64,000 bases of DNA. Source: Salpingoeca rosetta (lineage: Eukaryota; Protista; Choanoflagellata). Shown one piece after another: positions 6,225 through 30,444 of the stretch (the first letter of the stretch is position 1; each line of letters starts with the position of its first letter). The stretch lies in contig JAWQFM010000018.1 in NCBI GenBank assembly GCA_033442325.1, positions 512,617 to 576,616 on the forward strand. The letters are read 5' to 3'. The position numbers and the translations under genes were made by a program. The notes beneath the pieces were generated by a model that was given only the letters and a program-made list of their open reading frames with translations, was not told the DNA's origin and did no database searches.

Positions 6225-6288
<64 letters not shown>

Positions 6289-7070
6289 ACGCTGCCAGGG
6301 CTGCGCGTCACGGGCTGGGTCTTGGCGGGAAACTGAAGCGGCTGGAGGAGGCCGAGGCGAAGATGGCGAAGAGCCGGGGTGCCGGTGTGCAGGGGAACGG
6401 CGCAGGCAAGCACACAAGCAGCGGTAGCAGCAGTGGCAGCAGTAGTGGTGGCAGTGGGGATGAAGATGGGCATGCGAGCAAGCGAGCAAAGAAGGAGAAA
6501 AGGGAGAAGAAAGACAAGGACAAGAAGAGGAAGGACAAGAAGAAATTGAAGAAGGCGAAGAAGGAGGAGGAGAGGAAAGGAAGTGGTGATGACGACGATG
6601 GTGATGGCGACGGTGAAATGAAGAGCAAACGGGCAAAGAGGACCAAGCAACACGATGCTGGTGGAGAGGAAGCAGTAGCGAAGAAGAAGAAGAACAAGAA
6701 GAAGCAGAGTAAGGCGAAGGAAGAGAAGAAGAAGGACAAGAAGGAAGGGAGGAGTACACAAGACCAGAGCAAGCAGGATGCAGAGAAAGAGAAGCAACAG
6801 AAGCAACAGAAGAAGAAAAAGGAGAAGAAGCAGAAGCAGAACAAGAGCAAAGGTGCGGAGGCAGAAGAGGTGAAGGAGAACGGCTGCAAGACGGACAAGA
6901 ACACGAAGAAAGGAAAGAAGGACAAAGGCAAGAAGGATAAGCAGAAAGAGAAAGGACCAAAGGGTGAAGGGAAGACCAGTGGTAGCGCTGAGGGCAAGAC
7001 GACGAAAGACGCAAGCACAAAGGGTAAGAAGAAGAAGAGGAAAGACAAGGCAGACAAGAAAGCTGAGTGA
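4937..7070 (+). CDS. GPATCH4: G-patch domain protein 4-like with Lys-rich C-terminus
   Basis: Spliced MDVRALLRAQGWQEG|QGLGR G-patch, then KFDKAGLG, FAWWDHAFN, ISDEELFKACGGLTGHK|AARHGL and a KKE-rich tail. Confidence 0.85.
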
Positions 7071-15302: not shown

Positions 15303-15621
15303 GGTGCTGGTGGTGGTGTGCACGAGTGGTTGTTGTGAATCGCTGGTCGCGACAGGATGAAATGAACTTCACAGTCAGCAGCCCAACCTGAGAGAACTGG
15401 ACACTCCCACCTGAGTGTGATGTTGTGTTCCTGCTTTCCTGCATGCATCGGCGTGTCGTGACAGCGTGACAATTGCTGTGTCTGAGGATTGCAGTTGCCG
15501 CTGGACTTGCTGCCTGTCTCCTACACCTTGTGTTCATCCCCAAAACCCCCAACAAGAAGATTGAAGTCGGCATCTCGGACAAGAAGAAAAGACGCAACAC
15601 TGAAACCCTGAACCCTGAGGG

Positions 15622-15630
15622 AAAAAAAAA
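15622..15630 (-). terminator. Pol III oligo-T terminator of the tRNA gene
   Basis: T9 run on the minus strand ~38 nt after the tRNA discriminator base. Confidence 0.65.
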
Positions 15631-15667
15631 GTCAGGCGCGCTGTTTGGGAACGCTTTCATTCCATGA

Positions 15668-15741
15668 TAGCGACTGTTGGTTTCGATCCAACGACCTTGA
15701 GATTATGAGACTCATGCGCTCGCCGCCTGCGCCAAGTCGCT
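15668..15741 (-). tRNA. tRNA-Met(CAU) with initiator-type acceptor and T arms and an elongator-type anticodon arm
   Basis: Reverse complement folds as AGCGACT TG GCGC AGGCGGCGA GCGC A TGAGT CTCATAA TCTCA AGGTC GTTGG ATCGAAA CCAAC AGTCGCT A: perfect acceptor, D and T stems, CAT anticodon. Confidence 0.93.
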
Positions 15742-16123
15742 GACTCGCGTCTTGGCAGCACGCCTTGTTGTCTGCACTGCGCGGAACTTCCCTTTTGAAG
15801 CACTCATGGAACTGCAATGGCCGTAACACTTGTCTGTTTTGCTATGTTTCACAGTTATGCGATCGGGAAATCAGCATGCCCATCACTGCGACTGTGTCAC
15901 ATTTTCATGTCTCTCACATCAAAAACCCGTTTATTGCCAGCTTAGTGCCCTTCAAGCAGTTTCAATAAGATGTCAAGTCACATCAAGTCGCTTTGGTCAC
16001 ATGAACGAAATGAACACACAGCACGCGCAGCTACCTCACTCAACCACCCACCCACACACACACACACACACGCGCAGCTGCCTCATTCACACCCCCCCCC
16101 CACACACATACACACACATGACG

Positions 16124-30226: not shown

Positions 30227-30444
30227 AGGATTGTACTCTTTAGGATCATTTCTATAGTAACTATCCAGCTTTAGTCCCTCAACTAAGGCAAAGCTTTGAA
30301 GCACGATGACGACAAAGAGGTCGTTGTCCTGAGCGTGAGGCAGGTGCACGTTGAATGGCTTTTGCCGCTCGCGTGAGCCCTCGATGATCGCGCGCTGCCC
30401 GCCGCTGGCGGAAAGCACATGGACTTCGGACCAGTCCGAATGCT
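30227..30444 (+). ncRNA. U3: U3 snoRNA
   Basis: Box A'/A TACTCTTTAGGATCATTTCTATAG (30234-30257), box C' GATGA (30305), box B GAGCGTGAG (30331), box C GATGATCG (30383), box D-like CCGA (30436), terminal AGCA/TGCT stem; ~218 nt. Confidence 0.88.

What the first reader, a model, noticed from the sequence alone, without database searches (positions are those of the whole stretch)
15668..15741. Hybrid initiator/elongator tRNA-Met lacking the three G:C pairs typical of initiators
Seen: A1:U72, T-loop AUCGAAA (A54, A60) and T-stem U50:A64/U51:A63. The anticodon arm is UGAGU-CUCAUAA-UCUCA, with a U31/U39 mismatch and no G29-G30-G31:C39-C40-C41. Established: A1:U72, A54/A60 and the three G:C pairs mark eukaryotic tRNAiMet, while UCAGU-CUCAUAA-UCUGA with U31/U39 marks elongator tRNAMet. 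Stems are intact, with a compensated G28:C42 and an oligo-T terminator, so it looks functional. Inference: either an initiator that has lost the P-site determinant or a dual-role/third-class Met tRNA, implying unusual initiation rules in this lineage.
Basis: partly seen in the sequence, partly recalled or inferred. Interest (0 to 1): 0.8.

Follow-up and report, generated by a model that had tools for sequence, protein, structure and literature searches.

The report
Minor initiator-like methionine tRNA gene
This is a real, single-copy methionine tRNA gene of the choanoflagellate Salpingoeca rosetta, built like a start-codon (initiator) tRNA but with an anticodon stem like the ordinary methionine tRNA; it sits beside seven copies of a more typical initiator-type gene and three normal intron-containing elongator genes, so it is a third, minor class and not a sign that the organism lacks the usual two.

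Summary
A 74-nt tRNA-Met(CAU) lies on the minus strand at 15741..15668, with A1:U72, C3:G70, A54, A60, U50:A64, U51:A63 and anticodon stem UGAGU/UCUCA (U31/U39 unpaired). A T9 run lies 37 nt downstream.

The genome is Salpingoeca rosetta, by identical tRNA coordinates and spacing with a published table. It holds three CAU classes:
- E, 3 copies: a canonical elongator (G1:C72, T54) hidden by a 34-nt intron.
- I7, 7 copies: initiator-type, with an initiator D-loop and G28-G30:C40-C42, but also U31/U39 and C64.
- W: the window gene, single copy.

No gene has G29-G31:C39-C41. W differs from I7 at five stem pairs, all compensated, so its cloverleaf has been kept by selection.

Copia/Ty5-like primer sites (53 copies) match I7 and never W, which points to I7 as the main initiator. 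W alone has a purine at position 64, and a Rit1 homologue is encoded. Yeast initiators carrying exactly W's stem changes support normal growth.

Best reading (about 0.5): W is a minor initiator-class isodecoder. Expression is unproven, because the RNA-seq was uninformative.

The scan had already flagged I7 and the primer sites elsewhere in this genome.

The parts
15668..15741 (-). tRNA-Met(CAU) gene, 74 nt, class 'W' (single copy in the genome)
   Evidence: ARAGORN; Rfam RF00005 57.4 bits; unique in G000 by BLAST; listed as Met, 74 nt, not a pseudogene, in the published S. rosetta tRNAscan table (PMC6188563 Table S4b).
15735..15741 (-). 5' acceptor strand AGCGACU; A1 (pairs with U72) and C3 (pairs with G70) are initiator signatures
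   Evidence: Parse. Roles of A1:U72 and C3:G70 from PMC3950347.
15716..15732 (-). D arm: stem GCGC/GCGC with a 9-nt loop AGGCGGCGA. It has no A20 and is not the 7-nt initiator loop. It contains the A box
   Evidence: The seven-copy class has the 7-nt loop AGCGGAA.
15698..15714 (-). Anticodon arm UGAGU-CUCAUAA-UCUCA: U27:A43, G28:C42, A29:U41, G30:C40, U31/U39 unpaired
   Evidence: The elongator consensus stem UMAGU is given in PMC9023262.
15705..15707 (-). Anticodon CAU
15676..15692 (-). T arm GUUGG-AUCGAAA-CCAAC: A54, A60, U50:A64, U51:A63. It contains the B box GGATCGAAACC
   Evidence: This T-loop word occurs in only 8 tRNA genes of the genome, all of them Met.
15677..15677 (-). A64, the position that Rit1 ribosyl-phosphorylates in fungal and plant initiators. 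The seven-copy class has C here
   Evidence: Rit1 homologue in the genome. Rit1 acts on A64 or G64 (PMC7694415; PMC11301382).
15668..15675 (-). 3' acceptor strand AGUCGCU plus discriminator A73
15622..15630 (-). T9 run, the likely Pol III terminator, 37 nt downstream of the tRNA 3' end
   Evidence: Compared with other tRNA genes.

Best explanation
The window gene (W) is a functional but minor initiator-class tRNA-Met. It is a diverged paralogue of the seven-copy initiator-type gene (I7) of Salpingoeca rosetta.

Shown: the gene and its cloverleaf; its single-copy status; the two other CAU classes; the five compensated differences from I7; and the presence of a Rit1 homologue.

Inferred mechanism:
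- W is transcribed by Pol III from its internal A and B boxes, with a 37-nt trailer.
- It is charged by MetRS (CAU, A73).
- It is bound by eIF2 through A1:U72 and methionine.
- It is kept away from the elongation factor by the weak U50:A64 and U51:A63 pairs, and probably by Rit1 ribosyl-phosphate on A64.
- In the P site its A29:U41 and U31/U39 stem would make it a weaker, AUG-strict ('hyperaccurate') initiator, as the same changes do in yeast.

Bulk initiation is most likely done by I7, and elongation by the intron-containing class E.
For: Initiator marks on W: A1:U72, C3:G70, A54 and A60. Their roles are described in PMC3950347 and PMC6412873.

Selection on the cloverleaf: W and I7 share the acceptor stem (one pair apart), the T-loop, the anticodon loop and the variable loop. 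They differ at five stem pairs (6:67, 12:23, 29:41, 50:64, 51:63), each changed on both sides, with no broken pair.

No need for W in elongation: a canonical elongator exists in three copies (G1:C72, T54, C60, 34-nt intron at 37/38).

I7 as the main initiator:
- It has seven copies and the 7-nt initiator D-loop with A20 in six of them.
- It keeps G29:C41 and G30:C40.
- 53 genomic sites carry TTATGAGACCCA, the complement of its anticodon arm. In all eight sites that I fetched the match extends to 14 nt and directly follows an LTR end, with at least four different flank types, as in Ty5/copia.
- The W version of the site occurs only in W itself.

Rit1: a homologue is encoded (Rit1_C 85.6 and 72.2 bits, Init_tRNA_PT 34-37 bits). 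Of the CAU tRNAs with the initiator T-loop, only W has a purine at 64.

Yeast precedent: yeast tRNAi with G29A:C41U plus G31U:C39U grows normally and is hyperaccurate (PMC3950347).

Published call: tRNAscan-SE 2.0 called the 74-nt gene Met, not a pseudogene (PMC6188563 Table S4b).
Against: No evidence of expression or charging. Three RNA-seq runs gave at most about five reads over the gene, in one run only, and these libraries do not capture mature tRNA.

W lacks the initiator D-loop (A20, no residue 17) and two of the three G:C pairs. It has one gene against seven.

Its terminator is unusually distant, and it lacks the AAATTT-type upstream element seen before many tRNA genes here.

No retroelement primer site matches it.

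Conservation in other choanoflagellates could not be tested.

The second half of the Rit1 DUSP-like domain was not detected. Rit1's substrate in this organism is unknown.

Choanoflagellates are reported to use EFL instead of eEF1A (PMC6188563), so rules learned with eEF1A may not transfer.
Confidence: 0.5

Rival explanations
1. W is the dedicated, Rit1-modified initiator of S. rosetta. The seven-copy I7 class, with C64 and a G:C-rich T stem, serves as a second elongator or as a dual-purpose Met tRNA.
For: W is the only CAU tRNA with a purine at 64 and weak A-U pairs at 50:64 and 51:63. A Rit1 homologue is present. Rit1 acts on A64 or G64 of initiators and blocks eEF1A binding. I7 has G50:C64 and C51:G63, with nothing known to exclude it from elongation. 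W keeps G9 and the GCGC D stem, which I recall, from my own knowledge, as typical of yeast and animal initiators. PMC9023262 confirms only the GCGC stem, and for both Met classes.
Against: One gene would have to supply all initiation, while ten genes would serve about 2% of codons. I7 keeps more canonical initiator marks: A20 and the 7-nt D-loop, and G29:C41 plus G30:C40. Ty5/copia-type half-tRNA primer sites, which use the initiator in other organisms, match I7 in all 53 copies. Three canonical elongator genes already exist.
Confidence: 0.15
2. W works in elongation, alone or as well as in initiation: a true dual-role Met tRNA.
For: The anticodon stem differs from the elongator consensus UMAGU only at position 28. 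The D stem and D-loop length equal those of the genome's elongator class E. In yeast the initiator can act in elongation when position 64 is left unmodified (PMC11301382). AT-rich contigs, where the two checked have Pfam domains running in frame through TAA/TAG (ciliate-like), carry CAU tRNAs with A1:U72, A54/A60, an elongator-like D arm and the same G28-A29-G30-U31 stem. So this mix recurs in nature.
Against: A1:U72, A54/A60, U51:A63 and A64 with Rit1 present all argue against elongation-factor use. From my own knowledge, Drabkin et al. 1998 placed the vertebrate block at 50:64 and 51:63. A dedicated elongator exists in three copies, so nothing forces a dual role.
Confidence: 0.12
3. W is a silent or nearly silent gene copy with no present role: a relic of an old duplication of the initiator gene.
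For: It is a single copy. The T-run lies 37 nt away, against 20 nt or less for most tRNA genes here. The common upstream AAATTT-type element is missing. RNA reads were negligible. No primer sites match it.
Against: All five stem differences from I7 are compensated and no stem pair is broken, which decay would not produce. The A and B boxes are intact. A T9 terminator is present. tRNAscan-SE did not flag it as a pseudogene. Several I7 genes also lack the upstream element.
Confidence: 0.18

Closest known systems
Eukaryotic cytoplasmic initiator tRNA-Met (yeast IMT genes, animal tRNAiMet)
   Same: A1:U72, C3:G70, A73, CAU, T-loop AUCGAAA (A54, A60), GCGC D stem, A64 with U50 as in yeast, and weak 50:64 and 51:63 pairs.
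   Different: Only G30:C40 remains of the three G:C pairs: 29:41 is A:U and 31/39 is U/U. The D-loop is 9 nt without A20. Residue 26 is A.
Yeast IMT2 variant G29A:C41U,G31U:C39U (von Pawel-Rammingen 1992; Dong et al. 2014, PMC3950347)
   Same: Exactly the same states at 29:41 and 31:39 on an otherwise initiator body. In yeast this variant supports normal growth and lowers UUG initiation (hyperaccuracy).
   Different: That is an engineered mutant in yeast. W is a natural gene in a choanoflagellate, with further changes (D-loop, T stem) and untested function.
The seven-copy initiator-type tRNA-Met of the same genome (I7; G000 contigs C7 and C35)
   Same: 59 of 74 positions. Nearly the same acceptor stem, the same T-loop, anticodon loop, variable loop, U27:A43, G28:C42, G30:C40 and U31/U39.
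   Different: Five compensated stem pairs; A9 against G9; a 7-nt against a 9-nt D-loop; G29:C41 against A29:U41; C64 against A64. I7 has seven copies and is the retroelement primer; W has one copy and is not.
Eukaryotic elongator tRNA-Met (consensus stem UMAGU; here class E with a 37/38 intron)
   Same: U31/U39, A29:U41, G30:C40, loop CUCAUAA, variable loop AGGUC, GCGC D stem and a 9-nt D-loop.
   Different: W has A1:U72 instead of G1:C72, C3:G70 instead of G3:C70, A54/A60 instead of T54/C60, and no intron.

Membership tests
tRNA (Rfam RF00005) | Cloverleaf scoring above the family gathering score | tested here: met
   57.4 bits against 29, full-length match; ARAGORN.
tRNA-Met | Anticodon CAU with U33 and A37, and discriminator A73 | tested here: met
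   Charging by MetRS was not tested.
Eukaryotic initiator tRNA-Met | A1:U72 | tested here: met
Eukaryotic initiator tRNA-Met | C3:G70 | tested here: met
   Named a signature in PMC3950347.
Eukaryotic initiator tRNA-Met | Three consecutive G:C pairs G29:C41, G30:C40, G31:C39 | tested here: not met
   W has A29:U41, G30:C40 and U31/U39. The feature is listed as a main initiator feature in PMC6412873.
Eukaryotic initiator tRNA-Met | A54 and A60 in the T-loop | tested here: met
   T-loop AUCGAAA.
Eukaryotic initiator tRNA-Met | 7-nt D-loop with A20 and no residue 17 (from my own knowledge of the yeast and animal sequences) | tested here: not met
   The loop is 9 nt, AGGCGGCGA. I7 has AGCGGAA.
Eukaryotic initiator tRNA-Met | Anti-elongation determinant: purine 64 for Rit1 (fungi, plants) or weak 50:64 and 51:63 pairs (vertebrates) | tested here: met
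   U50:A64 and U51:A63. Rit1 homologue present. The modification itself is not testable here.
Eukaryotic initiator tRNA-Met | Delivered by eIF2 to the P site and used only at start codons | not testable with these tools
   Needs biochemistry or tRNA-seq of initiation complexes.
Eukaryotic elongator tRNA-Met | G1:C72, T54 and a pyrimidine at 60 | tested here: not met
   W has A1:U72, A54 and A60. Class E of this genome meets all three.
Eukaryotic elongator tRNA-Met | Anticodon stem UMAGU with U31/U39 | tested here: inconclusive
   UGAGU is one compensated pair away at 28:42 (consensus). The genome's own elongator has CAGGU.

The most novel reading that the evidence does not exclude
S. rosetta runs translation initiation with two diverged initiator tRNAs, neither of which has the 'universal' G31:C39 pair. 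The window gene, with A64, would be the Rit1-modified species restricted to initiation. The abundant C64 species would escape Rit1 and could also enter elongation, in a lineage that reportedly replaced eEF1A by EFL. That would be a natural rewiring of initiator/elongator discrimination and of start-codon stringency in a close relative of animals.
Probability: 0.15. Interest if true: 0.7.

Novelty: new variant of a known kind. Interest (0 to 1): 0.48.

Why it matters
The three G:C pairs of the initiator anticodon stem are taught as universal. Here a genetically tractable relative of animals appears to have no initiator-type gene with the full set. It carries two quite different initiator-like species, one of which (this gene) naturally reproduces a yeast laboratory mutant known to make start-codon choice stricter. 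If W is expressed, S. rosetta offers a natural system to ask three things: what the G:C pairs, A64/Rit1 and the T-stem pairs really do; how initiator and elongator are told apart when EFL replaces eEF1A; and whether tRNA isodecoders tune initiation. If W is silent, the finding reduces to an old duplicate. The lineage-wide loss of G31:C39 in the main initiator would still stand.

Tried and rejected
1. 'No elongator exists, so W or I7 must be dual-role.' I held this, which found no T54 CAU tRNA. Earlier notes about odd tRNA genes in this genome made me search for an intron-split gene. One search found three canonical elongators with a 34-nt intron, so the idea is rejected.

2. A canonical 3-G:C initiator. 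The pattern GGGCYCATAACCC with up to one mismatch gave 19 sites. The five that keep the CAT anticodon (L025, L027, L031, L036, L041) hold no tRNA.

3. The whole-genome Rfam tRNA census scored only 63 of 498 candidates, so it is not a census.

4. Expression. Three raw RNA-seq runs of 2026 plus one contig run were laid on 15400-16000. At most about five reads covered the gene, in one run only, some running past the terminator. This is uninformative for a mature tRNA.

5. Retroelement use of W. The half-tRNA site for W occurs nowhere outside the gene. The 3'-end site TGGTAGCGAYTG gave 18 I7-type hits against 1 W-type hit, but the total is not above the control count.

6. Relatives in metagenomes. 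No clear choanoflagellate orthologue was found. L130 and L135 have an animal-initiator-like body with a CUUGU/UCAAG stem, but they share flanks (a repeat family?) and L135 has a G5/A68 mismatch. One group sits in dense viral-type tRNA arrays. Another group lies in AT-rich, ORF-poor contigs; in the two that I checked (L116, L107), Pfam domains continue in frame through TAA/TAG, which looks ciliate-like. Function is unknown for all of them.

7. The MFE fold of W is not the cloverleaf (z -1.17), but the cloverleaf is within 1.2 kcal/mol of it, so this says nothing against the tRNA.

8. The second half of the Rit1 DUSP-like domain was not found in downstream frames.

9. Marck and Grosjean 2002, Kolitz and Lorsch 2010 and Drabkin 1998 are not held. 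Statements that rest on them are from citing papers or my own knowledge.

Full report
**1. The observation**

ARAGORN reports a single tRNA in the 64-kb window, tRNA-Met(cat), at 15668-15741 on the minus strand. Rfam's tRNA model matches it end to end at 57.4 bits (gathering score 29, E 9.5e-10). I parsed the 74 nt into a cloverleaf:
- Acceptor stem AGCGACU/AGUCGCU, giving A1:U72 and C3:G70.
- U8 and G9.
- D stem GCGC/GCGC with a 9-nt loop.
- A26.
- Anticodon arm UGAGU-CUCAUAA-UCUCA: U27:A43, G28:C42, A29:U41, G30:C40, U31/U39 unpaired.
- Variable loop AGGUC.
- T arm GUUGG-AUCGAAA-CCAAC: A54, A60, U50:A64, U51:A63.
- Discriminator A73.

A T9 run follows 37 nt downstream. The cloverleaf (-22.1 kcal/mol) lies within 1.2 kcal/mol of the computed minimum-energy fold.

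**2. Which genome**

The window is G000:C18:512617-576616 of a 55.4-Mb, 68-contig assembly. The published tRNAscan-SE table for Salpingoeca rosetta (PMC6188563, Table S4b) lists these Met genes:
- A 72-nt pair 216 bp apart. This is the same spacing as the pair on G000:C7.
- Two 108-nt genes at 961-1068 and 6245-6352 of one contig. I find them at the same coordinates on G000:C12.
- A third 108-nt gene.
- One 74-nt gene.

So the genome is S. rosetta. The window gene has already been predicted, as a plain 'Met, not pseudogene', without comment on its build.

**3. All CAU tRNAs of the genome**

The T-loop word GGATCGAAACC occurs 14 times in the genome. Eight of those sites are tRNA genes, all Met: the window gene and seven others.

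The seven others (class I7: two on C7, five on C35) are identical except for one copy with G20. They read AGCGAUU-UA-GCUC-AGCGGAA-GAGC-G-UGGGU-CUCAUAA-UCCCA-AGGUC-GGCGG-AUCGAAA-CCGCC-AAUCGCU-A. Their features are:
- A1:U72, C3:G70, A54 and A60.
- The 7-nt initiator D-loop with A20.
- Three consecutive G:C pairs shifted to 28-30:40-42.
- U31/U39 unpaired.
- C64.

Patterns for an intron-less T54 CAU tRNA found nothing. The canonical initiator arm GGGCYCATAACCC, with up to one mismatch, hit no tRNA.

Earlier notes on this genome describe permuted and oddly split tRNA genes. I therefore searched for a CAU tRNA with an intron after position 37. One search found three copies on C12. Fetched, they are a textbook elongator:
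- G1:C72, G3:C70, T54 and C60.
- Stem CAGGU/UCCUG with U31/U39.
- A 34-nt intron at 37/38.

So S. rosetta has three CAU classes: E (3 copies), I7 (7 copies) and W (the window gene, 1 copy; unique by BLAST). Nothing forces a dual-role Met tRNA.

**4. What W is relative to I7 and E**

W matches I7 at 59 of 74 positions and E at 46 of 74.

W and I7 share an almost identical acceptor stem, the T-loop, the anticodon and variable loops, U27:A43, G28:C42, G30:C40 and U31/U39. They differ at five stem pairs (6:67, 12:23, 29:41, 50:64, 51:63). Every one is changed on both sides, so the pair is kept. Neutral decay of a duplicate would break pairs. Five compensated changes out of five mean the cloverleaf of W has been maintained by selection over a long time.

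My inference is that W and I7 are old paralogues, descended from an initiator that already had U31/U39, or that were later partly homogenised.

**5. Which one is the main initiator**

Evidence for I7:
- Copy number: seven against one.
- It has the initiator D-loop.
- It retains G29:C41 and G30:C40.
- Retroelements use it as primer.

On the last point, the 12-mer TTATGAGACCCA is the complement of I7 positions 27-38. It occurs 53 times outside tRNA genes (61 hits in all, against 1+2 for the control). The W version TTATGAGACTCA occurs only in W itself, and the canonical-elongator version never occurs.

I fetched eight of these sites. All have the 14-mer GATTATGAGACCCA, the complement of I7 positions 27-40, directly after an LTR end (seven end in ...ACA), with at least four different flank types. 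From my own knowledge, this is the Ty5/copia 'half-tRNA' arrangement, which in other organisms uses the initiator.

An 18:1 skew towards I7 also appears at the 3'-end site TGGTAGCGAYTG, but the total is not above the control.

An earlier follow-up of this scan reached the same view of the primer site (s1-433389). I count that as a lead that I re-tested, not as support.

**6. Evidence that W is nevertheless initiator-class**

- A1:U72 enhances eIF2 binding and is required for initiator function in yeast. C3:G70 is a conserved initiator signature. A54 and A60 act in start-codon stringency (PMC3950347; PMC6412873). W has all four.
- The genome encodes a Rit1 homologue at G000:C24, about 90.7-93.9 kb. 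Rit1_C scores 85.6 and 72.2 bits on two exon-like ORFs, and Init_tRNA_PT scores 34-37 bits, all above the Pfam cut-offs.
- In fungi and plants, Rit1 adds ribosyl phosphate to A64 or G64 of the initiator and so blocks eEF1A binding (PMC7694415; PMC11301382; PMC7954030). Of the two initiator-type classes, only W has a purine at 64; I7 has C64.
- W also has A-U pairs at 50:64 and 51:63. From my own knowledge (Drabkin et al. 1998, cited), these are the positions that block elongation in vertebrate initiators.
- The missing G:C pairs do not exclude initiator function. Yeast tRNAi carrying G29A:C41U plus G31U:C39U, exactly W's states, grows normally. It lowers UUG:AUG initiation by about half, a hyperaccurate Ssu- phenotype (PMC3950347).

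**7. What remains open**

Expression is unproven. Three 2026 RNA-seq runs, with about a quarter of each read, gave at most about five reads over the gene, in one run only. Some of those reads extend past the terminator. Such libraries do not capture mature tRNAs.

Compared with about 40 other tRNA genes of this genome, W has an unusually distant T-run. It also lacks the AAATTT-type element at about -30, though several I7 genes lack that element too.

The distal half of the Rit1 DUSP-like domain was not detected.

Choanoflagellates are reported to use EFL instead of EF-1A (PMC6188563), so the eEF1A rules may not transfer.

I could not read other choanoflagellate genomes. The published table shows that Monosiga brevicollis has at least two 72-nt Met genes and one 73-nt Met gene.

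**8. Wider occurrence**

One metagenome scan looked for U31/U39 plus CAU plus the AUCGAAA T-loop. It returned 46 stretches:
- About 28 carry a CAU tRNA with A1:U72, A54/A60, an elongator-like D arm and a stem N27-G28-A29-G30-U31. Each is followed by a T-run. The contigs are AT-rich and ORF-poor. In the two that I checked (L116, L107), Pfam domains continue in frame through many TAA/TAG codons, which suggests a ciliate-like genetic code.
- Two contigs (L130, L135) carry an animal-initiator-like body with a CUUGU/UCAAG stem. They share flanks, and one copy has a mismatch.
- Several hits lie in dense, virus-like tRNA arrays.

So initiator marks combined with a stem lacking the G:C triplet recur in nature. 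Their function is unknown there too, and none is a clear orthologue of W.

**9. Verdict**

The strong interpretation, that this gene reveals the lineage's initiator or a needed dual-role tRNA, is not supported. The weaker one, a third class of Met tRNA and a lineage that departs from the 3-G:C rule, is supported.

My estimates:
- Minor initiator-class isodecoder: about 0.5.
- W is the dedicated Rit1-marked initiator and I7 a second elongator or dual-purpose tRNA: 0.15.
- Elongator or dual role: 0.12.
- Silent relic: 0.18.

It is a new variant of a known kind, of moderate interest. The more general point, already flagged elsewhere by this scan (s1-432627), is that I found no initiator-type gene of S. 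rosetta with G31:C39.

Noticed in passing
window 30227-30444 (+): A full-length U3 snoRNA gene (Rfam RF00012, 90 bits, E 2e-18).
   Followed up: no
L093-L095 (G000:C12:~960-1068 -, 6245-6352 +, ~187118-187226 +): All three elongator tRNA-Met genes carry the same 34-nt intron at 37/38, the layout that I recall for plant elongator tRNA-Met genes. The intron opens with ATCCGC, which resembles the 3' exon start ATCCTG.
   Followed up: partly
L004, L011, L013-L015 (G000:C7:437952-438239; C35:508538-584916): Seven initiator-type tRNA-Met genes have U31/U39 in place of G31:C39, a shifted G:C triplet (28-30:40-42) and C64. One copy (L004, the C7 copy at 438168-438239) has G20 instead of A20. The v1 assembly table lists only two of the seven.
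   Followed up: yes
L081 (G000:C24:90681-93866): A Rit1 (initiator tRNA phosphoribosyl transferase) homologue in a choanoflagellate. From my own knowledge, animals lack this enzyme. The distal half of its DUSP-like domain was not detected.
   Followed up: partly
G000, 53 sites listed; eight read as L142-L149: Copia/Ty5-like LTR elements with at least four flank types share the 14-nt half-tRNA primer site GATTATGAGACCCA. It contains an ATG and matches positions 27-40 of the seven-copy tRNA-Met.
   Followed up: yes
L044-L073 and others: Many S. rosetta tRNA genes share an AAATTT(T/C)-type element about 25-35 nt upstream and a CAA(C/G)(A/C)A-type motif about 5-12 nt upstream. All Gly(GCC) genes seen are about 108 nt long, so they contain introns.
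   Followed up: no
L098, L103, L107, L110, L112, L116, L120 and similar (metagenome contigs): AT-rich contigs carry a tRNA-Met(CAU) with A1:U72, A54/A60, an elongator-like D arm and a CGAGU/UCUCG stem. In the two checked, Pfam domains continue through in-frame TAA/TAG: ABC transporter in L116, acyl-CoA oxidase in L107. That suggests a ciliate-like code. Whether this tRNA is their initiator or their elongator is unknown.
   Followed up: partly
L097, L101, L115, L124 (metagenome contigs): Dense arrays of 9-25 tRNA genes (virus-like) include a G1:C72 tRNA-Met with the AUCGAAA T-loop and a conserved U5/U68 mismatch. They also hold tRNAs with stop-codon-reading anticodons: tta in L097 and cta in L115.
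   Followed up: no
L130:713-784 (-), L135:676-747 (+): Two related loci from one metagenome carry a tRNA-Met with the animal initiator acceptor stem AGCAGAG, A54/A60, A-U pairs at 50:64 and 51:63, A26, and a stem CUUGU/UCAAG with only one G:C pair. The build is W-like, on conserved flanks. L135 has a G5/A68 mismatch.
   Followed up: partly
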